A DNA stretch of 64,000 nt, taken from assembly GCA_964304625.1 (NCBI GenBank), contig OZ199840.1:8767487-8831486 (forward strand), in the 5' to 3' direction. A model generated the notes under the pieces. It was given only the letters and a program-made list of their open reading frames with translations, was not told the DNA's origin and ran no database searches. Both the position numbers and the translations under genes were made by a program. Origin of the DNA: Kudoa neothunni. Taxonomy: Eukaryota > Animalia > Cnidaria. Below are positions 22,928 to 47,063 of this stretch, piece by piece (positions within the stretch are counted from its first letter, which is position 1; every line of letters begins with the position of its first letter).

Positions 22928-25900
22928 TTATAGGTCATAGGCAATATCTTTGGAACGTCTTGAGTAAACCGTGATGCCGACCACCGCAAAAATTGAAGCC
23001 ACGATTGGTATCAGAGCATAAATGCTAAAACAATTCAAAAATAATGGATATTTAAATTTACATGTATCGGACAATCGACCTATTTAAAAGTTAGACAAAT
23101 AATTTGACATAAAAATACGAATTGACATTCTTCGCAGCTGCATGTTCTTGTTTCCGCTTACTATCTAGTCATAATTGGATAGTTTTATAATTAAACTATA
23201 AATACTTTACTAAATATAAATTAATGAACAATTCTACAAATCTATTTTTTAGTTACCTTTGTTCAACTACTTTTATAACTTTTTGAAAAATATCGTCTAC
23301 ATCGATGTTCTCATGCTCACTTCTTATTTGTTGTTCATCTATCAAAAATTGAATAATTTTGTGTTTTTTATTAATTACTAATAAAAATTTAATATTAACG
23401 AACATAATTATAGTTATTACCCTGTTGCTTTTGTAATTTTTGAATCTATTTTATTAATAAATATTAATGATTTCAATATGTAGAATATTTAATTTACATA
23501 AAATTTCATAATTTTCATAGTTAGAATAATCCTTTACTTTTACTGCAAATATATAATCTTTATCTTTTGATAATTTGCTGATATCGATATCACATCCGTT
23601 GGCCGAACAGTCCTCATCGTCGTTACACCAGGTAATTGTCGATGGGATTTGATTATCTGACGTTTTCTCTTTCAATATGAATGGACATCTATTAGTCTTT
23701 TGTTTCCCATGAAAATTCACACGAATTTTTAAATCAGCGCCATCTTTATAATTATAACTAACCGATGTTTCTCCACTCACTAAATTAGGCTTTATTCTTT
23801 TAACTGGTCAGTTTGTCATACCTGTAGTAATATTGTAGGTTTTAATCTTCTTCCCATCAGATGGTTCCACTGTCATATTATAGGTCTTTCCTAATTCTAG
23901 GTTAATGATTTGGAATTCACCGTCGCATTTATTTTCGCAAATCCCCAATCCCTCACAAGTGGCCATATATTTTTTATCCGTCCCACCTTGTTTCTCGAGA
24001 TAAACTCTACAAACTGGTAAAGAGTTTTCATTCTGAAATGGTGTGACTGTAGCCGTTTTATTTTTAATTGCCGCATTTGCCTTATTATCGGATAAATCAT
24101 CACCCTCTTCTAAACTGATTTAGATGTTGAGGAGATTAAATGAGAAATACTTGTTCTGAATATTGCTTTCTTTATGTAATTTCCACTGAAACCAATATTA
24201 GTAATTTTTACTGAAATCACGTAACTCGAACCAGCCTCCAACGAACCAATGGAATAAGAAACATCACAACCGGCACCACAATCACTTCCTTCACATTGAG
24301 CTCTGCTTTCATTGGGAATAATACTGGCTTTATATATATTTATTGTACACATTGGAACACTTGGGCCAGACTGTAAAGGTTTGTAAGAATCAAGTCCATT
24401 AAGTTTCACTCCTGAACTGGTTATCTCAGTTAAAGTAAAACCACTGTCACCTCCTATAAAATGTTAGTGATATAATTGATAAATTCGTTTACTTTTGAAG
24501 TATTGTGTAAATTTGTTGTTATCAAATCTTCTCGTAACGGTTACACCAACTTTTACAGATTCTTCCGTCAAATTAATAATGCCATCTTGACAAAGTTGAT
24601 AACAACCATCTTCAACGTCTTCACATTTATTCAAAATAGCAGTTTCTTGGTTTACACCTTCGCTGTTGACTTTAAACACTTTGATATGGCACATTTCATA
24701 ATTGTAAGGACCAGGTAAGAAATTTATTTTAAGTTGTTTTTGGTTTCCATTAACTCCGCTAATGGAAAATATAATATCAGACTTCAGAGGAATAGTTCCA
24801 TTCAAGTATGTATTATTGATATAATAGATTATTCCTGGCCACATATTTGTAGAATCAATTTTGTAATAACTCATGGATCTATCTATTGAGAAAGAAGCAG
24901 CCTTAATCGACACGATGTCGGAATAACTGGATAGACTTAAGTCATCTTTTTGACTTTGGATAAATGCATCCTTAGTATCATCGACTTGGATCTCCCAATT
25001 TGTCATTGAATTGGATTGATAGGTAAATTTAATTTTGCCATCCGCATGGCTCAAAGAATATAATTGTTTATGTTTGTAATCTACAAAATAAAATAAATAT
25101 TGTAAAATAAATAATTAATCAAATTATAAATAAATTTTCAATCAAAATTGGTAAATAAAATTATTAATTACCCATATTAATTGGAAAAACATTCTTTCTT
25201 TTGCATTTTTTTGCTTCTTCATCACTAACGCCATAGCAAACCGATACGTATCGATAAATTTTTGAGTTGATGAATCCGATCTCATTATCTCTTGAATTGC
25301 AATTCATCAAGCAAAACTCATTATCCGTGGTCGATTTGCATGATGGTTTTACGAAATCAGAGTTATCAAACACTGATAATTTTACGACACATTTGGTGTT
25401 CGCTGGAAATTGGGAAAGTGATATAGAGAATTTATCATGCTTGTCGTCTCCTTTTGGGGCGTATTTTTGCTGAAGTTTCCCACTTCGGGAAAATGCTTAA
25501 AAAGTTATTAAATTTATATTAGTCCATAATTTTACCAGGAATAGAAATCTTAATTGGCTTTGATTTCGCCTCTACGTAAATCATCAACCGATAATTAAAT
25601 TTATTATTGTATAAATTATCCGGAAAATTAATATCATTGCATTTTTTGAAATTTGAATCACCACTTTCACACCCAATGCAGGACTGCACTATTTCAGTAG
25701 GCGAAGCTAAATAGAATTATTATCGTAATATAATATATGTAACTACTGTTATTTCCTTCGTGTTTATATAATTGATAACGGCAATTTGTAGATTCAGCAT
25801 TTGTAATAATGTTTTGAGGTTTTATAACGAGTAGATTTTTCTTCGATTGATCTGAAATTTTAAATGTAATATCCTCACCAACTATATATTATTTATTCAA

Positions 25901-28900
25901 TTTTAATTCATATTCGATACTCGTTTGTTTATCATTTATAATGTTAATGTTATAATTTCCACTCGGCACTATTTTGATACTATATGTGGCACCAGAGTAA
26001 AGCCCAATGATGGTGAATGGAGAGCTGCACTCCTTTACGCACAATTTTTTTTCTAAACATATAGCAGGATAATATCCATTCTTAGAATCTTCTTCTTTTA
26101 CGTAAATTGTGCATGTGTTTGATAACGATGTAGAACCAGGAGTGAACGTGAATCCGTCTGCAGTGGAAGTAACTGAGATTTCTCGAGCTGAAAGATCATT
26201 TGATTGAGCTTAGAAAAATAATGTTTATTATTAATGCTTATCAATAATACTTATTTTATGATAGAAATATTTTCTTGGCTTATAATGAGGTATGTTTGTT
26301 ATGGTTACCATGATATCGTTGGGTAAATCAGTTGATGCAGATGTTATTTCCATCTCAGAGAACGTACATGAAGGGGGATTGACGTCTGCCCCCCTACTTT
26401 CGCTGACTAATGGAACATACGTATTCCAAATCTTCAATGAGCATGTGGCTGCAGATGATAATCCCGAGATAGATTGACCATCTTCATCTTTATTGTTAGC
26501 ACTAATGTTAATTTTGATCTTTTGCAGGTTAGTTTTTGCAGAAGTATCATTTCCGTGTTTAACTAAATTAACTTATTATTTTAAAATATTTATATTATTA
26601 CGTAAATAAATATTATTTTGGTAACCAATGATAGGAATCATCCCATATTTAAGGACACGTATTTTGACTGCTTTTACGCTTGTTGGTATATTTCCGAAAG
26701 TGATTTCACTGCAAATACTGTAAAGGCAGTTAGCTCTGTTTTCACAAATGTTCGAAAAGAATTGATTTGAGCGTGAGAATGTTGCGTCTATCCATTCAAA
26801 ATGTGCAAATATCAGAAGGACTCTCGTTAGTTAATTTCACGGTGAGCTTTTGATTTTCTTCGTTAACAGCCAATTCGTAGTAGAATCTGTTGAAAACCGG
26901 TGCGTGGGTTTTTACAAATGTGTTATCATAAAAATAATGGAAATCGAAATGTTTAGGACAATCTATGTGATAATCGCCGACAAGTTCACCAAACTGTATA
27001 GAGTAATGTCCAAAAGTACAGGGATTTTCACCACTGGTTGTAATTTCTTGTATACCACTTGCGTTATTTACATCCTTATGCAATTTACATGATTGTTCAC
27101 ATTTATTTGTTCCCAGTTTTATTTTGTCTCCGTCTAACTTTGCTACGTAGCTAATTTCCTCGTAAAAATCTTAGAAAAATTACGCTTACAAATTTTTATA
27201 TTTTTTACCTATATAATATGAAAAGACTATCCCTTTCTTGATCGTTTTAGTAGATTGGGTTTGCGATGGTTGATCTGGATTCGTTTTGGCGTCACGGTCA
27301 CCCTCTTCCGCTCTCTCAGTTGCAATGGCTGAAGGAGTATTGATTGTTACGGTATAATCATAAGTGAAAGAAATATAATTTAATTTCTTCGGAGAATTAA
27401 GGTTAATGGAAAATTCATTAGTAAGTTCGTTGCAGGGTTTTTTTAGTTCGTTTCCAGTTTTATCAGCAGTCTCATAACCATTTAAATTAGGGCATGATCT
27501 TTCGACAATACATTCCTTACCAGATTCGCGTATCAGTTCACCTTTCAATTTAACCTTATACTCACTATTTTGTTCGTCAAATCTTAAAACCATACCATCT
27601 TCGGCTTCTACTTTATTTACTAAAAATAATAAATTAAAATCTAGCATATAACAACCATAACTTTTCATATCTTTCTCGATGGGTTGAGCATGATTTTGAT
27701 TTATTACAACTATTTTATAAGGGACGCCAATGGTAAGTTTAGCCCATTGAATGTCTAACACATTTCCCGTAGATTTGTCTACATTGTTTTGACAAGCACC
27801 ATCCAAGCAATCAATGATTATTTTGTTGGACGCTGTTTCAACAATAAAATAAGCCCATGAATTTCCCAAAGTTTCGGCGTTCCCTGCGGTCATAGTAAAC
27901 GTAACCTTTTGTTCCGGGACATTAATTTTTGGAGCAACGGTGAATGTCGCACCGTTAGCTATTTGGAGATAAATATATAATTTGAAATATGGTATTACTT
28001 GTCGCTCGTTGACTTTCTACGCATGTATATCCCTTTGTACACAAGGTTATTTTATATGGTGTTTTTGGGTCGAGGTTAACAATATTGAAAGTACTAGTAC
28101 AAGAATCAAAGCAAAATTTTCTTTGATTATTTATTTCGCAAGTAGCAGGGTATTTGGAGGATAGATCCCCCACTACCGAGTAGTAAAGATTGCACTTTGC
28201 GTCGGAATTAATCTCGCCTGAGATAAAAGTAGCTGGAGTTAGATTTAATTTTGTTGGTTGGTTTATAACAGCTTCTGGAGTAAGTTGATTATTACCGGAA
28301 AACTTAGTTCCTATTTTACAGTTAGAAGGTAATTACTTTATATGAATACCTTCGGTTATGAAATAAATATATCTGTGATAATATTCAACTTCAGGTGAAT
28401 CTAAGGTAGTAAGTTTAGTTATCTTAATTTTTAAAACATATTCTGTTAATGGTTTCAGATCTTTAATTGCGATTTCACTAAAACTCTTGCATTCACTCGA
28501 TGATGCACATTTTGGATCCGCGCCATCAGCTTCGACTCCAAGATATTTTTCTACAATTTTCATTTCGCCTATTGCAGCACCACTTACTAGGTTAGCGTCC
28601 TCATTTTTATTCAAATTGGATAAATTAAAAATGGCTTGATTATTACTATCAATAGTTACACTAGGTTGATTTGTGCCAACTAAACTAAAGTCAAATTTAT
28701 TTTTTGGGGTAAAATATTACATGTCACGAGTTGAATAAATTCCTTATGGGTTGTCGTTCCTTGAGACACAACAATGACTTGAGCAAACTTCAAATCAGAA
28801 TCATGATAGAGAGTAGCTTTATAGCAAGGTTGGAGACAAGGCCCAGCTTTGTTCATATCTGAACAGTGAGAGGAAAAATGAGACTCGTTTATTTCTTTTA

Positions 28901-29753
28901 TTCCAAAGTAACAAATTTTAGATGGTTCTGGATTTTGAAGTTTTATCGTATAAAAATTTCTCTCGTTAAGAGTTTCTTTCGATCCAGTTGCGATAAACCA
29001 ATCTTGATTAGGTTTTTTTGGATTCAGAAATATTTGGGGAGATCGGTTGGTAAACTCAACAAAGGATGTTGTTTCATACGATAGTGAACTTAGTTTAAGA
29101 GTTTTTGTATCGGATTTATTATTATCTTTTTCTACGATAGTTTTGGTTGTGCCATCAACAATAGACTTGAACCCATCATTTACTTTTCTTTTAACGGATA
29201 TATTAAATTCATTATTTTTCTTTTCTACTGTGATATTACTTTTTATAAAAATATCTACAGAAATAATTTTACAACAATTATTAAAAGGCATAAATACCTC
29301 TGAGCGGGTATACTCTTTTGTTAATACATCTTTTTACATCTGTATCATTCTTTCCTTGGCACCATCTTACAAACTTTATTTTCTCCATTTCAGTTCTGTT
29401 CTGTTTATACTAAAGTTGAGTTTGTTGCATTCAAGGAGACACAAATTTGAATCTTGATCTACAGTTGACCCTGTTGTAACAGTGTTACATGATGAAAATG
29501 GCTTTAGTGCCAGTAGCTCACTATCGTAATACTGAAGAGCACATTTCCTGTGAGTATTTTCGATATTGTAACCAGAGATGAAAATTTTGTATTTTCTTTC
29601 ACTACTTATATAAGTTAACTTTAATGTATTGTTGTCAATATTATTTTTAACATTGTCATCAGGAATCACTAAAAATAAATAATAGTGGAATTTTGCGCAT
29701 AAGCTACCTCTATAAATAAATATAAATTTTATAAAAACATATATCAGTATCAT
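22928..29753 (-). CDS. Large (~1,900 aa) type-I membrane protein with ~18 Cys-containing FN3-like domains in three super-repeats; two frame lesions (possible pseudogene)
   Basis: Hydrophobic leader MILIYVFIKFIFIYR. About 20 exons joined by short GT-AG introns, phase 1 throughout the ectodomain, with recurring I..L..G/P..Y.I.V FN3 strand motifs. TM segment IIYALIPIVASIFAVVGITVY, tail SRRSKDIAYDL* (TAA 22928-22930). Lesions: 5-bp duplication at 29396-29405 and +1 T at 26798-26801. Confidence 0.85.
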
Positions 29754-31364
29754 AATATGTTTATGAATGGTTTTAGTCGTTAGACGAGAAATTATACCAA
29801 CTTACAACTTTAATACTCAATTGTTATCATTAAAATGTGATAAATAAATCCTATTAAGTACCTTAATCATGGGTAATAATTAATTTCAACAATATCGATA
29901 TATTTAGTTTCTTAATTGTATTTCTGATACAATAATTGACTAATAGCTTTTTTTCAATAATCAATATTTTATAAAACAGAATTGAAATTTTATATATAAA
30001 TTTGTTTTTTGTGGTAACAAATTAAAGTACAATTCCCTACAAGTTGTATTCGGAAGATTTAATAAACACTCATTCAGTTAATAAATCCAAACCAGCACCT
30101 TCCATTAGACTTATATGATTTAAAAGATATCTAACAAGTTTATTTTCTATTAAAATATGTCGAATTAAAATAAATAAGGAAGCTTAGAGTTTTCGATTTA
30201 CAAAGTTTTGAATTCACCAATCAGAAACTGTAAATAAGATTAAGGTATCCCGTTAATAAAATATCATGGTAGAAATAAAATGTACCGATTTAGTTGAATT
30301 TTAAACATTATATTATTTAATTTTTCTTAATCTAATCTATCTATCTTTTCCTCATACAGTGACTTCCTAGAGTATTTGAGTTTCTTAATATACTTTAAAA
30401 AATACAAAATTAACTACAAAAATATAAGGGGGTTTTCTGCTTTCTTATAAAGTGGTGAATTTGTAGTGTCAACTTTTTGAAAACAGATTAGTGCTGACAA
30501 TAATAAGATTACTTTATCATGTGATTCGCTATAATGTTCAATAATATGCGTATATAACTTTAATTTTTATTATTTAAATACACCTGAAACTTTAACTTTA
30601 CTCTTTTCACACTTTAAACTAAGTTAGCAAGTTCTACAACATTTGTTCGTGCGTAGGCGGAGTTTCGGTGTAAACGAAGATTAATATGCGTGAATAAATT
30701 TTTTACTTAGCACGTTTATTTAAAGTTAATATGTTTTAAATATTTTTTAAATAAACATAAAATTATGTTATATCGTAATAATTAAATAAAACATTGATAA
30801 CAAACTTTTAGATTAGTTAGTTAATCGACGGGTTAGTTAGGTGATTAATACACCACATACGCCACATGAGTTATAAGAACTTATGATTTCTAAATAAAAA
30901 TAAAGTGAAGATGGCCAGGTTATTGCTGTTTATTTCGATCAACACTTTAGTCAAACGAACTAGAAAATAATTATAATTGACTCTTAACATAAAATGACCT
31001 TGACCTATTCTAGGCTTAAGTCGGCGGGGTTTTTGCGCTAGTATACAGATAACTATGTGATTATTATACGCGCGAGCTAATAAATACGTAAAACTAGACG
31101 TTACCAATTTAACACAAATTTTTCCGTGATTACGTAAAACCGTTCACTGACTGTATTTTATATTTATTAGTCCATTAAATAAAAATACCCATTTATTTCC
31201 TTCCTATTCATAAATAAATTGTAAAATTTAAATATTTAAAAATTTAAAATCTATCCCCTATATTTTTTTAAAAAATTAAATGACTTACAATATCAAATCT
31301 AATAATCCGTATCAAATGTTGATTCTAGTTGTATCGCGTGTGTATATTTTTAAGTATATTTAAG

Positions 31365-37135: not shown

Positions 37136-39249
37136 TTAGACATTTATTTGACGAATGGGCGCGACAATAGAAACTTCCACATTTTGAGCATTTGGATGAG
37201 GTTTTCTTATCGTTTTCACAAAGACAATGTTCATATCTTCGTTTAGAAGTATTTTAATCTGCAAAGTTGTATGAGATCTTTTTAAACATTTTTTCATTTG
37301 GGAATTTCTTTCCAAAAGAGGTTTATACAACTCTCCAGCCATTTCTTTCAGAAAATCACGTCTCATTTTTGTGAAATCGTCAAATATGTGTTTATACAGA
37401 CAAAATGAATTTATCAAAGTCAAATCCAACATATTGTAAAAGACCGCCATGGGCCAGCGTCGATTAAATCTGCGGACCGAGGCGGAAGCTGGCATCCGAT
37501 CCATGATATCTACTCCTCCTTTAGAACCATTATAATTCATTATTGTTTCAGGCTTTAATTTATGTGTATCGTTGGTTATGTTGGTGTTGGTTGTTCCTGA
37601 GGATAGGAGAATCACTGCTCTTCTTTTTTGTTGACATATGAAGTGATCATATATTTATCAAAAAATGTAAACATAGTGCTGAATAAGGATCGATTTCTAG
37701 ACGGGAGAACACACGGTGGTAAATCTCTCTTATTATGTCGAATTGTTCCAAGATATGTCAGACGTTTGTCTAACAGCTTCTCGGCTAATCTAAGGGAAGA
37801 GAAAAAATTATCTGCAACTATAGTTCTTCCTGAGTTATACAAGGGAGCTGTAAAGGAAAGCACAATATTCTCACCAACACCATAGTTTTGGCTAGCTTGA
37901 GTTCCGCTCTTTCCTAGATAGGGAGAAATGTTTACAACATATTTGTGGACTGGATCGACTGCTAGGAAAAACTTTAGGCCATATTTCGCCGGCTTCATCG
38001 GCATATATTGTCTAAATGAGCATCTTCCTCTAAACGAGACTAACTGCTCGTCAACGGTGACATTTTCACCGGGGAAAAAACATATAGGTAGAGTCTGGAT
38101 CCATATGTTGCGAATTGGACAAAATTTATCCAATTCTCTTCTTTCAGATCTGGTGCTTGGATTATCAAAATGAATAATACATCGTAGAATTTGGTGAAAA
38201 CGATTAAATGAAAAGATTTCGCGATACATCTCTCTCCCTTCCTTTATACTAAACATTTCTAAAAGAGGTTGCTCTCTTTCTTTGTAGACAGCCATAAAAA
38301 TTAGTGTTCCGAAAAATCCTCTTAATTCAACGTCGTCTAAATCATTCCATAAATCAGAAAAGTGTAATTTCCCGTGAACGTTTGTTTGTTTGTTTTATTA
38401 TTTCCTGACAAATTTCATTAGTGAAGAATATAAAAAACAGTCCAACACGTTTTCAACGCTTTGTATGCAATAAGCTGTTGGCCCAGGACGAGGATTCATA
38501 ATATTCTCTTTCAGCATTTTTGATGGAGATGGCTTATTCAATGTCCAAAGTGTTCCTCTTTTGCTTGTCGTAGAATCCGCAGGATGTTCGCAACCTGATG
38601 TGTCATCGGATTCTTCACAATATTCAGGAGCGATTCCATCAATGTCGCTACTTAAAGGTTGATATTCATCGCTAAAACCCTCAGATGGCGCCACGATTAT
38701 CCCAATGTGCGCAACTAACGATAAAATTGGTGTATATTTCGCGTTAACTCGCATATACGGTCATAAGGCTTACATTATCTATAGCTTATTTTGTAATGGA
38801 TTATTTATTGCTAGCACACGCGGGTAATATGTTAATTTTGTTTGTTTTTAGCTAATAAAGATTGACCTTACGATATTCATTCAAACGGTGGTTTACGACA
38901 TGTTGCGATAACATATTTAATCGGATTATATTGATTAATAATTGCTGAATTTCTCAGTATTTGTTAGGAAGAATTTTTTAAAAATTTCCTAATCATCTAC
39001 TAATAATTTTCTACATACATAAATCAAAAAAAATCTGGGGTCTTTTTTACCCCCAAAGCCCGTTGGAAGATAAAAATTTTGTTCAATAAGAAATAATCAA
39101 TATTCCACATTAAAATTTTTATAAATCTATTTATTAAAATAATTTAGGAGAATAGACGAAATTTTAAGTATCCCAGATAATTATTAAATATTCTATGAAC
39201 AAATTAAAATTGTTTTGGGGTCTAAAAGACCCCAAGTCCGTTAGAGGAT
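37136..39249 (-). mobile_element. piggyBac element (PGBD4-like transposase, frameshifted)
   Basis: ORFs 38398-38754, 37612-38295 and 37136-37615 contain VDEQLVSFRGRCSFRQYMPMKPAKYG, DNFFSS, GTIRHNK, KGGVDIMD and RRWPMAVFYNMLD. 5' terminus has GGGGTC..GACCCC palindromes near 39037 and 39217. The other terminus was not resolved. Confidence 0.9.
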
Positions 39250-39352: not shown

Positions 39353-41806
39353 CCTTCCAAGCATGTCAAAAACGACTATACACATACACCAAGCAATTTT
39401 GGTGTCCAGGAGGACCCCAGATTTTTATTGCTTATTTTGATACATAATATTGTGATATACAAGTTCATTCTTTAAAAAAGTTTTTTATCGGCGCGATAAC
39501 AAAATAATCATAATTTATGAGTTGGCCTATAGTGGTCGAAGTCAGACGAACATTTATTAATTAATTTTAAGTATTTAAATATTGATAAAAGTCTTTTTAA
39601 GTACGCCATATGATTTTTTTACAATGTTATCTAGATACTTAAAAGATAATAGAACTTATTAAATTGCACTAATATCTTAAAACACATATATTCTCTTTCG
39701 GCAACATGATTGCGATTTTACCGATTCTAAAAGTTATTCAATGAAATTTTTCGATTAATTATAAAATATTGCTTAACTGGTATTTTTTGAAATATGAATG
39801 AGTTAGGAAAATCTACGGTTTCTGGCATACATAAGTCAATCATTTATGATAAAATACGGATTAGTAATTATTTATCAAATAATTAATATGATCCTTAACT
39901 AAGCGAAAAACGAATCAAAACTAATGATGAAGTATATAATAAAGAACTAAATATAGTTTACTAATCATTTTTTGTTATGCACTCGCAACAAATAGTTCTC
40001 GAATGTTTGTTGTAACAGAATTGGGAGAAATTGTAACATTGATTTTTTGTTTTTGTATCGGGCAGTCGAGCGCATAAGCTACATCTCTTTTTCGTCATAT
40101 ACATCACGGTTCCATCAGTCGAAATCAGTACAGTTGGGTTGTTGGTGGGCTCCACTAATGAGTCTGCAAGTTGTTCTGAATAATTGCTTCTACAAATATT
40201 AGACTTATTAAATATCGTTTTAAATAGATAAAACGAATTGAATAAACTTATATCGATCATATTATAAAAAATCACCATAGGCCATCTTCTGGTGTATCTT
40301 TTAACGCCAGTCATGGACAGGATACGATCTACCGTATCCACACCCCCCTTAGTTTTGTGTTATAATCAGTGATAACCTGGGGCTTTTTTGTCTTATCTTG
40401 GCATAAATTGACATTATTTGAGGATGTAGCCAATAAAATGACCGCTTTGTTCCTCTTTGAAACATACGACACCATCATTTTTTTGCATGAAAAACGAATA
40501 TAGAACTAAAAATCTCTCTCGATTTCCTAGCTTTAAGAATTAATGGAATGTCTCGTTTATTATGGCGGATAGTCCCCAGAAGGGTTAAGTCAAGGTTAAG
40601 AAGTTTTTTTGCCAACGTAACAGAGGTAAAAAAATTGTCACAAACAATGTTTCTTCCAGATACTTTTAAATGCGACGAGAGCTCTAAGACGACCTTTCCA
40701 CTGACACATTTGTTAATTTCGTTATTGGTTTTTCCAAGATAAACGGAAATATTGTGTGTATAGTTGGTACAAGGGTCAGTTAAAAGAAAGAACTTAATGT
40801 CATAAACTGCAGGCTTAGAGGACATATACTGCCTAAAAGGACACCTGCCCCTAAATGCAACTAACTGTTCATAGACGGTAACATCAGAAGAAGGAATTAC
40901 ACACATCGGCAAACTATTTTTCCATCTATTGAAAACATCGGTTACAGGGCAAAACTTATCATTGTCTCGCCTCAGACTCCTTGTCTCATAATCATCAAAA
41001 TGAGACTTCTATTTACTTGGGTGAATCTATATAATGACATAATTCTACGAAATATATCGCCCTTTATTCAAACTTCAAACTCCATAACTGCTTAAGAGAT
41101 TCCATTTTAGCCTTAAAGATAGACATATATATTAGAATTCCTATATATGATTTAAATTCCACCATATTCAGATCTTTCCATTTTTTCCCGTAATGAAATG
41201 CACAAAATTTGTTAATGTGAATAATGACTGAATTGAAAAACTCATCATCAAAAAAATAGAAAAACAGTCCTGTAAATTGCAAATTCGGGATGTTACAAAT
41301 GTGGTCAAACCTGGAGGTTTGTTTAAGATGTTTTCTTTTTTAACTTTTGTATTTGAAGGTACAACTGAAGACCATAGCACATTGTTTTTGTCCCTATACA
41401 TGTCAGGAACGCCATCATCCGAACTATCACAGCTAGATGTAGAGAAATATTCTTCAATTTCACTATAATCAGAGTCAATATTTGTTAGAAAACCATCATA
41501 TAATTGTTCCATTTCTAACGGTAAGCGCAATCGGTATCATTCGGGTAATGTCGGAAACACAAACCTAGATTTTTCTCATTATTTAGTGGATGTAACCTTT
41601 CGAGATTAAAATATTTTATTTTTTATAATTTTATAAATGTTTCTATGAAATAAAAACGTGGAGTCCTCCTGGGCCCCCAAACTGCTTGGCGTAAGTATTT
41701 GACATAAAATCATAACAAACAAAAAAATCATAATTTTAAAATTAAATTATAAATATATAGAAACTTTTAAAAGAATAATGATTGGACTCCAGAAATGTTT
41801 GGAAGG
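39353..41806 (-). mobile_element. Full-length piggyBac element with decayed transposase
   Basis: TTAA TSDs at 39349-39352 and 41807-41810; TIRs CCTTCCAAGCAT / ATGTTTGGAAGG; subterminal inverted repeats near 39389 and 41658. Transposase is split in four or more ORFs including the C-terminal Cys-rich domain; catalytic DE is changed to YE. Confidence 0.93.
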
Positions 41807-43554: not shown

Positions 43555-46500
43555 GCAGATCGAAATGCCCAAAAGACAAAAAAAGAAAAAGAGAAAGGTC
43601 ATTCAAAATTCAAAATTTCATTTTAATTTTCTCATTTTTTAACAACAAAATAGATGTGAATATCAAATATTCCAGTGTGTGTGCGGTTAAAAAAAGAGCA
43701 AGGGGACCCTCGGGAAGAAGCAAACCGAGTATGAATTTCGTAAGAAATCTATCATTAAATCAGGTAGAAATCTAACAATTATATATTGAATGTGGTTATT
43801 TTAACTCAAATTTTTAATTTTAGTCCATTCAAAATGATGAAAATCCCGATTTCTTTGACAACTCAGGTAGATTTGTTATTTACGAATCTTTGGTGATAAA
43901 ACTGTTTGAGAAACAAAATTTTTTTAAGTTATTACAACAAATTAAATTATTTGGCAGCAAGTAAATATCGAAGTTTATTAACAAATGGTATCACCTATCG
44001 AAGTTTAATAGATTGACTTTATGTGGATGATTTGTTTCTATTTCTAAACACCTTTTAATCTATAAAATGACTGTTAAAGAAAAAAACAAGACCATTTCCT
44101 GATTGATTCGGTTTAGAATTCAAGACCTTCCCCGTTCATTCATCAAGCAAGGCCTTAGTAAAAGCGCAAAGTGCACCATCTAAGACAGATGAATATTCGA
44201 CTAGAGTAAGCTAATGATTCACTATTATTAAAATATTTTAATATTTAGGCCGCCACAAAAATAGATACATCAAATTTGTCAAAAAACGACTTTCCAAGTG
44301 CTGCACCCGACTATTCAGCCCAATGTAGTTCAAATTATAGCAATCATTATATAATTAAAACATATTTAGATCACAAAAAGGTGGTTAAAGCATCAAAAGG
44401 TAATAAAAATTTCCCTCTCTAATTAAATATATTTAAAAAAAAAGAGCCTCTATCGACAGATGAAGTTAGCAACGTCGAGGGTGATTTTTCTAATAAGTTC
44501 CCTGTTAATTATTTATTTATTTATTTATCAGGAGATGCTTTTAACAATAATGAAAACAAGGAGATGAATTTGTTCCAAGATAAATTGACAGGCGTTGAAT
44601 CATCAGTTTCTTCTTCCTCCAGAAATCAAACGCCCAGTGGAGATCTGCTAGCACAAAGTTCACACCCAAAGAAAGAAGGTGATTTTTAATTTGATATCGT
44701 TTTGCCGTTTTATTTGAAAATTTATTGTAGAAACCAGGAAAATAAACGATGACGGTAAGTACCTACAATAATTACCTCCAAATGATAAACTCTTGTCGTT
44801 AGATGGTTTCGCAGATAGAAAAATTTCATCAGCATCTAAACTCAAATCAAGTAATATCAATAAAAAAGTGAAAACGAAATTTCATCCGCGTCTTTAGTTG
44901 ATAACAAAGAATCGAGCGACGTAAAAAATGATAAGAAAAATAAAGCAGCTCAAAAGGAGGAAGAAAAAAGGAGGAAACACGCGCTCAAAGAAGAGGAAAA
45001 GCGGCGTAAGATAGCACTGAAAGAAGAAAAATTAAAATATCAAAGACTCAAGGAGGAAGAAAAAATGCGTCAAAAATTGGCTAAAATTGGAAAACATAAA
45101 TCTTCTTATGATAAAAAAGCTTCCGCCAATGTAGAAGTTCCCATAAGTCTAACTACATCAGGTAGCTCACTTTTACAGTCCAAAGACATTATTGCTTACA
45201 ATCTTTAAATTAAAAAATATTTCTGTAGATGTGTCACCAAATGTTGTCATTAAAGAGGAACCACTTCAAGTTGAAAACGACCACGAAGTATCTAAATGCG
45301 TAAAGCAGGAGAAACCATCCGAAGGTGACAAAGGCGAGAAATCATCAAAAGCTACTAAGCAAGAAAAACCTAAGAAACCTGAAAAACCTAAAAAGGAAAA
45401 GAAATCACAAAAAGTTGATAAAAATGAAACCCCAATAAAATCTGATATGGAAAAGAAACCACACGCGACAAATTTCGACGAAAATTCTCCAAAACTGAAC
45501 ATCAAAGATAAATCACCAGAAGCTCCAAACGAAGAGAAACCATCCGAAGATTTCAAAGACGAGAAATCACCCGTAGTTGATATTGAGGGGAAATCTCCAT
45601 ATATGCATAGAGAAGTAAAGTCATTTAGTACTGATAAAACAACAAAATCACTAGAAGCTGCAAGTGAAGAGGAATCATTTTATGCTGACAACGACGAGAA
45701 ATCGCCCGTGGTTGATGTTATTGAGAAGTCTCCAGATATAATTAAAGAAAACAAGTCACTTAGCACTGATAACGAGACAAAAGCACCTGAAGGTGCCAAC
45801 AATGAGGAGTCACTCCTAATTTCTGTTGGAGGCATATCTTCAAATATAAAAGAACAGGACAAGTCACTTAGTCTTAATGAGGAAACAAAAGCATCAGAAG
45901 CCACAAGTGAAGAGAAACCATCTGAAATTGACAACGACGAGAAATCGCCAATAGTGGATGTTAATGAGAAATCTCCAAATATAATTAAACAGGACAAGCC
46001 ACTTAGTATTGACAACGAAATAAAAGCACCTGAAGGTGACAACGACGAGAAATCGCTTGTAATGGATGAAGAGAAGAAATCGTCAAAAGCTGCTATGAAA
46101 GATAAATCATCGAAACATGAAAAATCAAAGAAAGAAAAGAAATCGCAAAAGGTAGAAAGCAAAGATAAATCTTCAACAGTAGACATCGATGAGAAATCAC
46201 CAAAAGCTACGGGTAGAGAGCAACCATCTGAAACTGACAAAGATAAGAAATCGCCCAAAGCTGCTAAGAAAGAAAAAACATCCAAATCTAAAAAAGAAAA
46301 GAAATCCCAAAAAGTTGATAAGGAGACCTCATCAAAACTTAATACGGAAACGAAACTACAAAAGGTGGGCAACGACGAAACATGTCCAAAAGTAGACATT
46401 CGAGATAAATTGCCAGAGGTTACAATTGGAGACAAATCATCCGATGGTGATAAAGACGAGAAATCACCCAGAGCTGCCAAGAATGAAAAACTACCCAAAC

Positions 46501-47063
46501 CTAAAAAAGAAAAGAAATCACGTAAGTTAGATAGCAAAGATAAATCTTCAAAAATAGACATAGATGACAAATCACCAGAGGTTGCAAGGGAAGAGGAACC
46601 ATCTAAAACAGACAAGGGCGAGGTATCGCCCATAATTGAGGAGGGAAAGAAATCGCCGAAAGCTGCTAAGAAAGAAAAACCACCAAAATCCGAAAAAGAA
46701 AAGAAATCACGTAAGTTAGATAGCAAAGATAAATCTTCAAAAATAGACATAGATGACAAATCACCAGAGGTTGCGGGGGAAGAGGAATCATCTAAAATAG
46801 ACAAGGGCGAGGTATCGCCCATAATTGAGGAGGAAAAGAAATCGCCGAAAGCTGCTAAGAAAGAAAAAAAAGAAAAACGTGAAAAATCTAAAAAAGAAAA
46901 GAAATCACACAAAGTTGATAGGAAGGAAGTTGCGCCAAAATCTGATGTGGACACGGAATTACCTAAGGTAGATAGTGTAGAAAAATCTACAACGTTGAGG
47001 AGCGATGACAAATCACCCCACGACGTCAATCAAAATAACGAATCAACGGCAACAGGGAAATAA
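43555..47063 (+). CDS. Lys/Glu/Ser-rich KSP-repeat protein, multi-exon, 5' end unresolved
   Basis: A chain of small GT-AG exons from 43555 leads to a coiled-coil-like exon (~44803-45161) and a ~1.8-kb last exon with 15 KSP motifs and KKEKKS blocks. Probable -1 lesions near 44862-44867 and ~47049. Confidence 0.72.
46503..46890 (+). repeat. Near-perfect 189-bp (63-aa) coding tandem duplication
   Basis: cgtaagttagatagcaaagat starts at 46521 and again at 46710. Confidence 0.9.

What the first reader, a model, noticed from the sequence alone, without database searches (positions are those of the whole stretch)
22928..29753. Unrecognised giant surface protein built from three copies of a five-exon cassette of Cys-rich FN3-like domains
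Seen: about 14 short ORFs splice through phase-1 introns into one protein with a leader, ~18 domains, one TM helix and an 11-aa tail. The exon order A-B(double)-C-D-E repeats three times (~29669-27662, 27619-25538, 25495-23498). D exons align: KCNLY..KYPATCE..KFCFDSCTSTFNIVNLDPKTPYKI / TCTIY..YYPAICLEKKLCVKECSSPFTIIGLYSGATYSI / VCRVY..KYMATCEGLGICENKCDGEFQIINLELGKTYNM. Known: L..G/P..Y.I.V is the FN3 E-F strand signature, but canonical FN3 domains lack a four-Cys pattern, and symmetric phase-1 exons allow shuffling or skipping. Inference: a lineage-specific, highly diverged adhesin, receptor or variant surface antigen that could be diversified by exon combination. I recognise no named family.
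Basis: partly seen in the sequence, partly recalled or inferred. Interest (0 to 1): 0.82.

Follow-up and report, generated by a model that had tools for sequence, protein, structure and literature searches.

The report
Kudoa giant FN3-like surface protein family
The window holds one member of a large, undescribed gene family of a tuna-muscle parasite (most likely the myxozoan Kudoa neothunni); each gene encodes a membrane-anchored protein of about 1,900 residues built from 18 disulfide-stapled fibronectin-III-like domains, a plausible parasite surface or adhesion coat.

Summary
The gene is real. It lies on the minus strand (29753-22928) and has 22 exons. All introns from the leader to the third cassette are phase 1 and 39-91 nt long. 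The order is leader, three A-B-C-D-E cassettes, a short stalk, one TM helix and an 11-aa tail.

Profile comparison supports the triplication (D1/D2/D3 98-99.6%). AlphaFold2 plus Foldseek show that a D exon is an FN3 fold and a B exon is two tandem beta-sandwiches.

It is not a lone orphan. About 65 loci in the same 40.26-Mb genome hold the B3 exon, and 23 of 27 compared loci keep the full 16-exon order. No Pfam family reaches threshold. Outside this genome I found only short exon-sized fragments from other species.

The genome matches the published Kudoa neothunni assembly, whose paper does not mention the family. The same scan flagged at least five paralogs at other loci.

The assembled copy carries two frameshifts. 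Read contigs show the +1 T is an assembly error and the +5 nt is present in only about half of the depth. dN/dS against the nearest paralog is 0.43, so the gene is constrained.

Function is inferred, with no RNA evidence. A candidate nested intron (stwintron) lies in the tail.

The parts
29708..29753 (-). Exon 1: ATG plus a 15-aa hydrophobic leader (MILIYVFIKFIFIYR), ending in phase 1
   Evidence: Conserved in paralogs L001-L004, followed by a 39-nt GT..AG intron. Mean Kyte-Doolittle hydropathy 1.99.
29298..29668 (-). Exon A1 (cassette 1). It has 6 conserved Cys and carries the 5-nt duplication as assembled.
   Evidence: Aligned to paralogs. A1~A3 profile probability 96.8%.
29393..29397 (-). 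5-nt tandem duplication (AACAG) that shifts the frame of the assembled copy
   Evidence: Absent in L001-L004. Left out in one read contig, 7.68 of 16.3 depth. It is a heterozygous or haplotype variant.
28721..29254 (-). Exon B1 (double-size)
   Evidence: Open frame with phase 1 at both ends. The second half of B1 matches the second half of B2 at 95.1%.
28350..28679 (-). Exon C1
   Evidence: C1~C3 84%, C1~C2 78%, C1~D1 86%.
27999..28310 (-). Exon D1 (FN3-like, 6 Cys)
   Evidence: D1~D2 98.9%.
27662..27958 (-). Exon E1
   Evidence: One of the most variable exons among paralogs.
27209..27619 (-). Exon A2, with a variable-length Pro/Thr/Ser/Glu-rich linker
   Evidence: It has the highest dN/dS of all exons against L001, 0.78.
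26602..27169 (-). Exon B2, the most conserved exon. It carries one extra T as assembled.
26798..26798 (-). Extra T in a T run (TTTT versus TTT) that shifts the frame in the assembly
   Evidence: Absent in four paralogs. Left out in all 3 read contigs covering it, 25.8 of 25.8 depth. This includes the contig that matches the locus with no mismatches. It is an assembly error.
26251..26562 (-). Exon C2
25921..26208 (-). Exon D2 (FN3-like, 4 Cys)
   Evidence: D2~D3 99.6%.
25747..25881 (-). Exon E2a (first half of E2)
   Evidence: A 40-nt phase-1 intron (25746-25707) splits E2 in all paralogs.
25536..25706 (-). Exon E2b (second half of E2)
25172..25495 (-). Exon A3
24493..25080 (-). Exon B3: two tandem beta-sandwich domains
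   Evidence: AF2 model pLDDT 78.4, all-beta. Foldseek hits are FN3 pairs and Fab fragments. About 65 genomic loci hold it.
24151..24453 (-). Exon C3 (4 Cys)
   Evidence: C3~D3 97.4%.
23822..24109 (-). Exon D3: FN3 fold with 4 Cys
   Evidence: AF2 pLDDT 80, pTM 0.71. Foldseek top hits are FN3 domains and monobodies, TM 0.6-0.73, rmsd 2.4-3.1. ESM Atlas hits are fn3 clusters.
23498..23779 (-). Exon E3 (4 Cys), the membrane-proximal domain
   Evidence: dN/dS 0.26.
23422..23445 (-). 24-nt micro-exon (YSKITKAT)
   Evidence: Fixed length in 27 paralogs. The 24-nt parse gives an open frame to the TM exon in 25 of 27.
23339..23421 (-). Candidate nested intron ([D1,2] stwintron). It consists of G (23421), an internal 43-nt intron (23420-23378) and the rest of a 40-nt external intron (23377-23339).
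   Evidence: G|GTRA...(Y)nAG|TRA is conserved in all 27 paralogs. Frame logic supports it. The definition of [D1,2] stwintrons is in PMC12403724. There is no RNA confirmation.
23257..23338 (-). Stalk exon (DEQQIRSEHENIDVDDIFQKVIKVVEQ)
   Evidence: It has only one open frame, and the residues are conserved in 27 paralogs.
23119..23160 (-). Stalk exon (SKRKQEHAAAKNVN)
23062..23079 (-). 18-nt micro-exon (SSIVRY)
22928..23024 (-). Last exon: TM helix IIYALIPIVASIFAVVGITVY, tail SRRSKDIAYDL and the stop codon
   Evidence: Best 19-aa hydropathy window 2.45, and no other exon exceeds 1.07. The exon and its C-terminal Y-[DE]-L are conserved in most of 27 paralogs.

Best explanation
The locus is one member of a multigene family of about 65 loci that I found only in Kudoa-like myxozoan sequence.

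Shown:
- Each gene encodes a type I membrane protein of about 1,940 aa.
- The order is a short signal peptide, three ancient copies of a six-domain cassette (exons A, B as a double domain, C, D, E), a charged stalk, one TM helix and an 11-aa cytoplasmic tail ending in Y-[DE]-L.
- The D exon is an FN3-type sandwich and the B exon is two tandem beta-sandwiches. The C and E exons are related to D by profile only and were not folded. The A fold is undetermined.
- The window exons hold 61 Cys in all, and most are conserved, as expected of extracellular disulfides.
- The family grew by gene duplication with a fixed exon plan, under moderate purifying selection.

Inferred:
- The protein is a long, rod-like, glycosylated ectodomain on the parasite cell surface (plasmodium, sporoplasm or valve cells).
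- It acts by binding, either parasite to host or parasite cell to parasite cell.
- It does not signal by itself, because the tail is too short for an enzymatic domain.
- Diversity between paralogs is greatest in the membrane-distal and middle exons (E1, A2, D1).

The window copy is probably functional in at least one haplotype.
For: Gene model and phases.

Intact paralogs: L004 reads open from ATG to stop. L001 is open through exons 1-17, but it lacks the AG at one tail acceptor.

Family size and clustering on three chromosomes. The 16-exon order is kept complete in 23 of 27 loci.

Triplication: hhalign D1/D2/D3 98-99.6%, A1~A3 96.8%, B1~B2 91-95%, C1~C3 84%.

Fold:
- D3 AF2 pLDDT 80, with FN3 and monobody hits at TM 0.6-0.73.
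- ESM Atlas fn3 clusters.
- B3 AF2 pLDDT 78, with FN3 pairs and Fab fragments as hits.
- The D profile hits titin, Dscam and fibronectin among PDB sequences, and FN3-rich receptor PTPs in the 1.84-billion library.

Topology: only two hydrophobic segments. Conserved Cys counts are even in 11 of 15 exon types (E2a and E2b taken together); B2 and A3 are odd.

Constraint: dN/dS 0.43 against L001 and 0.40-0.41 in two other pairs. Membrane-proximal D3 and E3 are at 0.22-0.33, and A2, E1 and D1 reach 0.8-1.0.

Frameshifts: the read contigs contradict the +1 T, and only about half of the depth carries the +5 nt.

Organism: 40.26 Mb, N50 12.04 Mb, 3 chromosomes plus an 18.2-kb mitochondrial genome, about 30% GC. 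This matches K. neothunni in PMC12239612.
Against: - There is no transcript or protein evidence. The RNA runs carrying the same species label gave zero reads.
- Signal-peptide and TM calls rest on hydropathy only.
- The assembled haplotype has a frameshift, so this allele may be null.
- The A-exon fold is undetermined.
- No domain reaches the Pfam fn3 threshold.
- The cellular location and any binding partner are wholly inferred.
- dN/dS below 1 gives no sign of the strong diversifying selection that is typical of many host-exposed antigens.
Confidence: 0.6

Rival explanations
1. It is a variant surface antigen system. Only one or a few of the ~65 genes would be expressed at a time, and switching would let the parasite evade fish antibodies, as with var, VSG or VSP families.
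For: - It is a large family with many clustered, partly chromosome-end-proximal arrays and inverted duplicates.
- Many copies have stops or frameshifts, forming a pseudogene reservoir.
- The distal exons are the more variable ones.
- Other myxozoans have been proposed to carry variant surface families (10.64898/2026.02.11.705288).
Against: - Pairwise dN/dS is 0.4 overall, with no exon clearly above 1.
- There are no expression data.
- K. neothunni is reported from tuna muscle (PMC12239612), and, from general knowledge, Kudoa plasmodia develop inside muscle fibres, where antibody pressure may be low.
- No conserved switching elements were looked for or found.
Confidence: 0.2
2. It is a structural or cell-cell adhesion component of the parasite's own multicellular body, for example cell-in-cell contacts, valve-cell sutures or the spore coat, rather than a host-interaction molecule.
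For: - Metazoan FN3-repeat membrane proteins are classically cell-adhesion molecules. The nearest sequence matches are Dscam, titin, fibronectin and R3 receptor PTPs.
- There is purifying selection, and the membrane-proximal and B2 exons are conserved.
Against: A purely structural role does not explain ~65 diverged paralogs at about 50% identity. There are no proteomic data.
Confidence: 0.15
3. The window copy is a recent pseudogene of the family, and its exons are a decaying relic.
For: Two frameshifts are present in the assembled sequence. Several other paralogs carry stops.
Against: - The +1 T is contradicted by all read contigs, including the locus-specific one. The +5 nt is absent from about half of the depth.
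- There are no stop codons inside any exon frame.
- All splice sites are intact.
- dN/dS against L001 is 0.43.
Confidence: 0.05

Closest known systems
Metazoan FN3-repeat type I membrane proteins, e.g. R3-type receptor tyrosine phosphatases (PTPRB/PTPRJ-like), Dscam and sidekick
   Same: They share a signal peptide, a long string of FN3-type sandwiches, one TM helix, and one domain per symmetric phase-1 exon. The D profile retrieves them (P0028 and P0033 have 12-23 fn3 domains plus a PTP domain). The D3 model superposes on FN3.
   Different: This family has no cytoplasmic catalytic or signalling domain, only an 11-aa tail. Most domains carry 4 (2-6) conserved Cys. There is no conserved strand-B Trp. 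No domain passes the Pfam fn3 cut-off. It has a triplicated six-domain super-repeat and about 65 paralogs.
Apicomplexan 6-Cys (s48/45) proteins such as P230
   Same: They are parasite surface proteins built from many Cys-stapled beta-sandwich domains arranged in repeated units, and they form a lineage-specific family.
   Different: There is no sequence or Pfam match to s48/45. The Cys pattern differs, the topology here is FN3-like, and the organism is an animal with intron-rich genes. The resemblance is one of design only.
Variant surface families proposed in the myxozoan Sphaerospora molnari (VSP-like, RIFIN/STEVOR-like)
   Same: They are expanded, lineage-specific membrane protein families in a myxozoan, interpreted as host-interaction molecules (10.64898/2026.02.11.705288).
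   Different: Those proteins are CXXC-rich VSP-like or small RIFIN-like proteins. That paper does not mention fibronectin or FN3 (0 occurrences). The family here is FN3-like and about 1,940 aa long.
Fungal [D1,2] stwintrons (for the nested intron in the tail)
   Same: An internal GT..AG intron sits between the G and the T of the donor of an external intron. Both halves have normal intron size (definition in PMC12403724).
   Different: This one is in an animal (a myxozoan), not a fungus. It is conserved across a gene family. Splicing intermediates have not been observed.

Membership tests
Fibronectin type III (Pfam PF00041 / FN3 fold) | Seven-stranded beta-sandwich of about 90-100 aa with FN3 topology | tested here: met
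   D3 AF2 model pLDDT 80. Foldseek top 50 are almost all FN3 domains or monobodies, TM up to 0.73. ESM Atlas hits are fn3 clusters.
Fibronectin type III (Pfam PF00041 / FN3 fold) | Score above the Pfam gathering threshold for fn3 | tested here: not met
   Nine of 53 D exons hit fn3, best E 0.0088, and none reaches the cut-off. The other exons give no hit.
Fibronectin type III (Pfam PF00041 / FN3 fold) | E-F region motif (hydrophobic-x-hydrophobic..L..G/P.T.Y.hydrophobic.V, the tyrosine corner) | tested here: met
   Invariant F65, L70 and Y76 in 53 D exons. This is the stretch that matches titin, Dscam and fibronectin.
Fibronectin type III (Pfam PF00041 / FN3 fold) | Conserved Trp in strand B | tested here: not met
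   There is no conserved Trp column in alignment A2. Strand B carries C-x-[IV]-Y instead.
R3 receptor-type protein tyrosine phosphatases | Cytoplasmic PTP catalytic domain after the TM helix | tested here: not met
   The cytoplasmic tail is 11 aa (SRRSKDIAYDL) before a stop conserved in paralogs.
Apicomplexan 6-Cys (s48/45) | Match to the s48/45 domain profile and its 6-Cys pattern | tested here: not met
   No such Pfam hit at E up to 1 for any exon.
Giardia-type variant-specific surface proteins | More than 10% Cys with many CXXC motifs and a conserved C-terminal pentapeptide after the TM helix | tested here: not met
   61 Cys in about 1,940 aa (about 3%). The exon consensus sequences are not CXXC-rich. 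The tail ends in Y-[DE]-L.
[D1,2] stwintron | A canonical internal intron that splits the G|T of the donor of an external intron, so that the donor is regenerated after the first splicing | tested here: met
   The sequence pattern G|GTRA..(Y)nAG|TRA is present in all 27 paralogs. Only this parse keeps the frame, in 25 of 27.
[D1,2] stwintron | Two consecutive splicing reactions, demonstrated by an RNA intermediate | not testable with these tools
   No RNA reads map to the locus.

The most novel reading that the evidence does not exclude
This would be the first FN3-based variant or contingency surface-coat family described in a metazoan parasite. About 65 giant paralogs would be expressed selectively to vary the Kudoa surface. 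A conserved nested intron would act as a switch, because failure of its second splicing step places a stop codon just before the TM exon and so yields a secreted form in place of the membrane-bound one.
Probability: 0.15. Interest if true: 0.85.

Novelty: new variant of a known kind. Interest (0 to 1): 0.55.

Why it matters
Myxozoans are extremely reduced parasitic cnidarians, and most of their lineage-specific genes are uncharacterised.

- A family of about 65 genes of about 7 kb each is roughly 1% of a 40-Mb genome with about 5,300 predicted genes. It is an obvious candidate for the parasite's surface or host interface.
- It could therefore serve as a source of diagnostic antigens or of targets for studying tissue tropism in Kudoa, which spoils tuna and other fish flesh.
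- It is a clean example of domain-per-exon, phase-1 modular growth through an ancient triplication of a five-exon cassette.
- It contains a candidate stwintron outside fungi.
- Protein-hint gene predictions for this genome probably fragment or miss these genes, so the exon model given here is directly usable for re-annotation.

Tried and rejected
- A shortest-path gene model that allowed any GT..AG bridged the two frameshifts with spurious 28-35-nt introns. I dropped it once the paralog alignments showed the indels.
- Brute-force enumeration of splice paths in the tail gave thousands of solutions and was uninformative.
- Reading the micro-exon as 25 nt, or skipping it, fails the frame test. 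Skipping gives TAA in most paralogs.
- One script was killed by the sandbox and rerun.
- The Rfam and tRNA scans of the window were blank.
- The Pfam AP2 search, a test for an apicomplexan origin, was blank. The 12 homeobox hits fit a reduced animal.
- The ESM Atlas feature search of exon A3 gave no usable hit.
- The B3 profile's hit to a designed repeat protein in PDB (7ue2) was discarded as a composition artefact.
- RNA and DNA runs carrying the same species label gave zero reads. The label is probably the fish host, so this is no test.
- Literature searches combining Kudoa or myxozoa with fibronectin, surface or multigene terms found no description of the family.
- A search for leader exons in four loci that lack cassette-1 hits was inconclusive.
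- The spliced full-length protein was never sent to any search or fold tool. All searches were made exon by exon, by reference. Exons were concatenated only inside scripts, to check reading-frame continuity. SignalP- or TMHMM-type predictors and a full-length fold were therefore not run.
Full report
**What is in the sequence**

The region is AT-rich eukaryotic DNA of about 30% GC. It holds a string of minus-strand open segments separated by 35-90-nt AT-rich gaps.

My first automatic model was wrong at two places, so I used paralogs to define the gene. A search of the window's own genome with the B3 exon gave 96 matches. About 65 are separate loci, most covering the whole exon at 47-78% identity, on all three large contigs.

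Four close paralogs were aligned to the window gene: L001 at 86% nucleotide identity over 7.4 kb, plus L002, L003 and L004. The alignment gave a consistent model:
- A leader exon at 29753-29708.
- Sixteen exons: A1, B1, C1, D1, E1, A2, B2, C2, D2, E2a, E2b, A3, B3, C3, D3, E3.
- All are joined by GT..AG introns of 39-91 nt, every one in phase 1.
- L001 and L004 are open through all of these exons.

**The tail**

Downstream of E3 the nucleotide conservation across 27 paralogs marks four small exons and the TM exon. A plain reading fails the frame test:
- With a 25-nt micro-exon, the next exon is entered out of frame. That exon has only one open frame and conserved residues.
- Skipping the micro-exon creates TAA in most paralogs.

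The frame closes if the micro-exon is 24 nt and the following 83 nt are removed entirely. With that parse, 25 of 27 paralogs read open to the conserved stop.

The 83 nt have the form G | GTRA...(Y)nAG | TRA...AG in all 27 copies, and both halves are of normal intron size. That is the definition of a [D1,2] spliceosomal twin intron (PMC12403724). This rests on sequence and frame logic only. A non-canonical GG donor is the alternative.

The resulting C-terminus is a charged stalk, the helix IIYALIPIVASIFAVVGITVY and the tail SRRSKDIAYDL. Hydropathy finds only this helix (2.45) and the leader (1.99) as hydrophobic segments. Discounting the two indels below, the coding length is 5,817 nt, about 1,938 aa.

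**Frameshifts**

Relative to four paralogs, the assembled copy has a 5-nt tandem duplication in A1 at about 29393-29397 and one extra T in B2 at about 26798.

I laid public reads on 23800-29790. One run, stored as contigs, probably comes from the sample the genome was assembled from. It covers the whole stretch unspliced, so it is DNA.
- All three contigs over 26798 lack the extra T. One of them matches the locus with no mismatch over 524 nt.
- One contig carrying only two other differences lacks the 5 nt, at 7.68 of 16.3 depth.

So the 1-nt shift is an assembly error. The 5-nt insertion is a haplotype or heterozygous variant, which fits a diploid fish stage and HiFi k-mer coverage of about 7 (PMC12239612).

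dN/dS between the window copy and L001 is 0.43, so the copy has evolved under protein-level constraint.

**The triplication**

Exon peptides from 27 loci were aligned by type and compared profile to profile:

| Pair | Probability |
|---|---|
| D2~D3 | 99.6% |
| D1~D2 | 98.9% |
| D1~D3 | 98.0% |
| A1~A3 | 96.8% |
| B1~B2 | 91% (95% for the second halves) |
| C1~C3 | 84% |
| C1~C2 | 78% |
| B2~B3 | 57% |
| C3~D3 | 97% |
| C1~E3 | 56% |

C, D and E are therefore one domain kind. The A-B-C-D-E unit was triplicated before the paralogs diverged. All 27 loci keep the exons they have in the same order, and 23 show every one of the 16 exon types.

Conserved Cys counts are even in 11 of the 15 exon types, taking E2a and E2b together. 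B2 and A3 are odd, and B1 and E2 are even only near the 80% conservation threshold. The window exons hold 61 Cys in total.

**Fold and family**

- With a 53-sequence alignment (A2), AF2 gives a D3 model of pLDDT 80 and pTM 0.71. Its Foldseek hits are almost all FN3 domains or monobodies, at TM 0.6-0.73 and rmsd 2.4-3.1. ESM Atlas neighbours are fn3 clusters.
- B3 (alignment A1) models as two tandem all-beta domains, pLDDT 78.4. Its hits are FN3 pairs, cytokine receptors and Fab fragments.
- The D profile matches titin (5e-8), Dscam and fibronectin among PDB sequences, through the E-F strand motif.
- No exon reaches a Pfam threshold. Nine of 53 D exons touch fn3, at E 0.009 or weaker.
- The A-exon fold is undetermined.

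**Relatives elsewhere**

- The word-index search with the B3 profile found one protein in 5.8 billion. It sits on a 2-kb metagenome contig that is only 65-73% identical in DNA to any copy here, so it comes from another species with the same exon order.
- The exhaustive profile search of 1.84 billion representatives gave 301 hits. The long ones are ordinary FN3 giants such as receptor PTPs.
- By a strict motif search, only three short fragments among the 150 listed hits carry the 4-Cys D motif. Four more show the same Cys pattern by eye.
- Two of these fragments were compared with this genome. P0007 is at most 63% identical to any copy, and P0019 at most 47%.
- The P0019 search also revealed at least 149 further loci with this domain outside the (ABCDE)x3 genes. 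These include arrays at C3:36-184 kb, C1:16.44-16.56 Mb and C2:9.78-9.87 Mb. The domain is therefore a major building block of this genome.

**Organism**

- The genome is 40,260,978 bp in contigs of 17.15, 12.04 and 11.05 Mb, plus an 18.2-kb contig.
- The small contig encodes a divergent COX1 with 8 in-frame TGA codons and no detectable tRNAs.
- The genome holds 12 homeoboxes and no AP2 domain.
- These figures match the Kudoa neothunni assembly recovered from yellowfin tuna HiFi data: 40.2 Mb, N50 12.0 Mb, three chromosomes plus a circular mitochondrial genome, 30.41% GC, 49-nt introns, k-mer coverage about 7 (PMC12239612).
- That paper does not contain the words surface, fibronectin, paralog or orphan.
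- Other myxozoan papers in the library describe different surface families.
- The identification is an inference from these matching figures.

**Interpretation**

The anatomy, the fold, the family size and the selective constraint are shown. The function is inferred. The long disulfide-stapled FN3-like rod, the single-pass anchor and the tiny tail point to a binding or coat protein on the parasite surface rather than a signalling receptor.

The three rivals (antigenic variation, self-adhesion or a spore-structure role, and pseudogene) are weighed in their own sections.

No RNA was available to test it.

**Limits**

All searches were made exon by exon, by reference.
- Signal-peptide and TM calls are hydropathy-based.
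- Nothing about expression could be tested.

**Earlier notes of this scan**

Five first-stage notes on the same contig describe the same triplicated cassette. Their positions coincide with paralogs found:
- s1-690167 corresponds to L009.
- s1-693019 corresponds to L012.
- s1-693042 corresponds to L014.
- s1-692991 corresponds to the B3 hit at C3:9.498 Mb.
- s1-693015 corresponds to the B3 hit at C3:9.457 Mb.

So the scan has found this family before, on other DNA of the same genome.

Noticed in passing
window 23339-23445 (minus strand); same element in loci L001-L026: Candidate [D1,2] nested intron (stwintron) after a 24-nt micro-exon, conserved in all 27 paralogs examined. If the second splicing step failed, a stop codon would follow at once and give a TM-less protein. 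Stwintrons have so far been described in fungi.
   Followed up: partly
window 26798 and 29393-29397: The assembly has one extra T that every read contig contradicts. It also has a 5-nt duplication seen in only about half of the read depth. Low-coverage consensus errors and unphased indels may break other gene models in this genome.
   Followed up: yes
G000 C3:36-184 kb, C3:2.79-2.84 Mb, C3:4.88-5.03 Mb, C2:9.78-9.87 Mb, C2:10.1-10.9 Mb, C1:16.44-16.56 Mb: At least 149 further matches to a 4-Cys FN3-like domain lie outside the (ABCDE)x3 genes, often in dense arrays. Some are near contig ends. Several related families appear to share this domain.
   Followed up: no
window 37136-38295 and 40475-40912 (minus strand): ORF fragments matching the piggyBac-type transposase DDE_Tnp_1_7 (E 3e-41, 3e-07 and 3e-25), split over adjacent frames. 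They are probably decayed transposon copies.
   Followed up: no
window 45192-47063 (plus strand): A 623-codon open frame rich in Lys, Glu and Ser, with KSPK-type repeats. It has tandem repeats of 135 nt and 189 nt and strong AT skew, and no Pfam match.
   Followed up: no
G000 contig C4 (L028, L029): An 18.2-kb mitochondrial contig with 44% GC against about 30% in the nucleus. Its COX1 is divergent (242 bits) with 8 in-frame TGA codons, and ARAGORN found no tRNA genes.
   Followed up: partly
last exon, window 22928-23024, and the same exon in the paralogs: The 11-12-aa cytoplasmic tail ends in a conserved K/S-[DE]-x-x-Y-[DE]-L-COOH in nearly all paralogs. It may be a sorting or export signal.
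   Followed up: no
loci L010, L017, L018, L021: Four of the 27 fetched paralog loci show no detectable A1 and B1 exons, or no cassette 1 at all, at the expected place. They may be shortened or more divergent N-terminal variants.
   Followed up: partly
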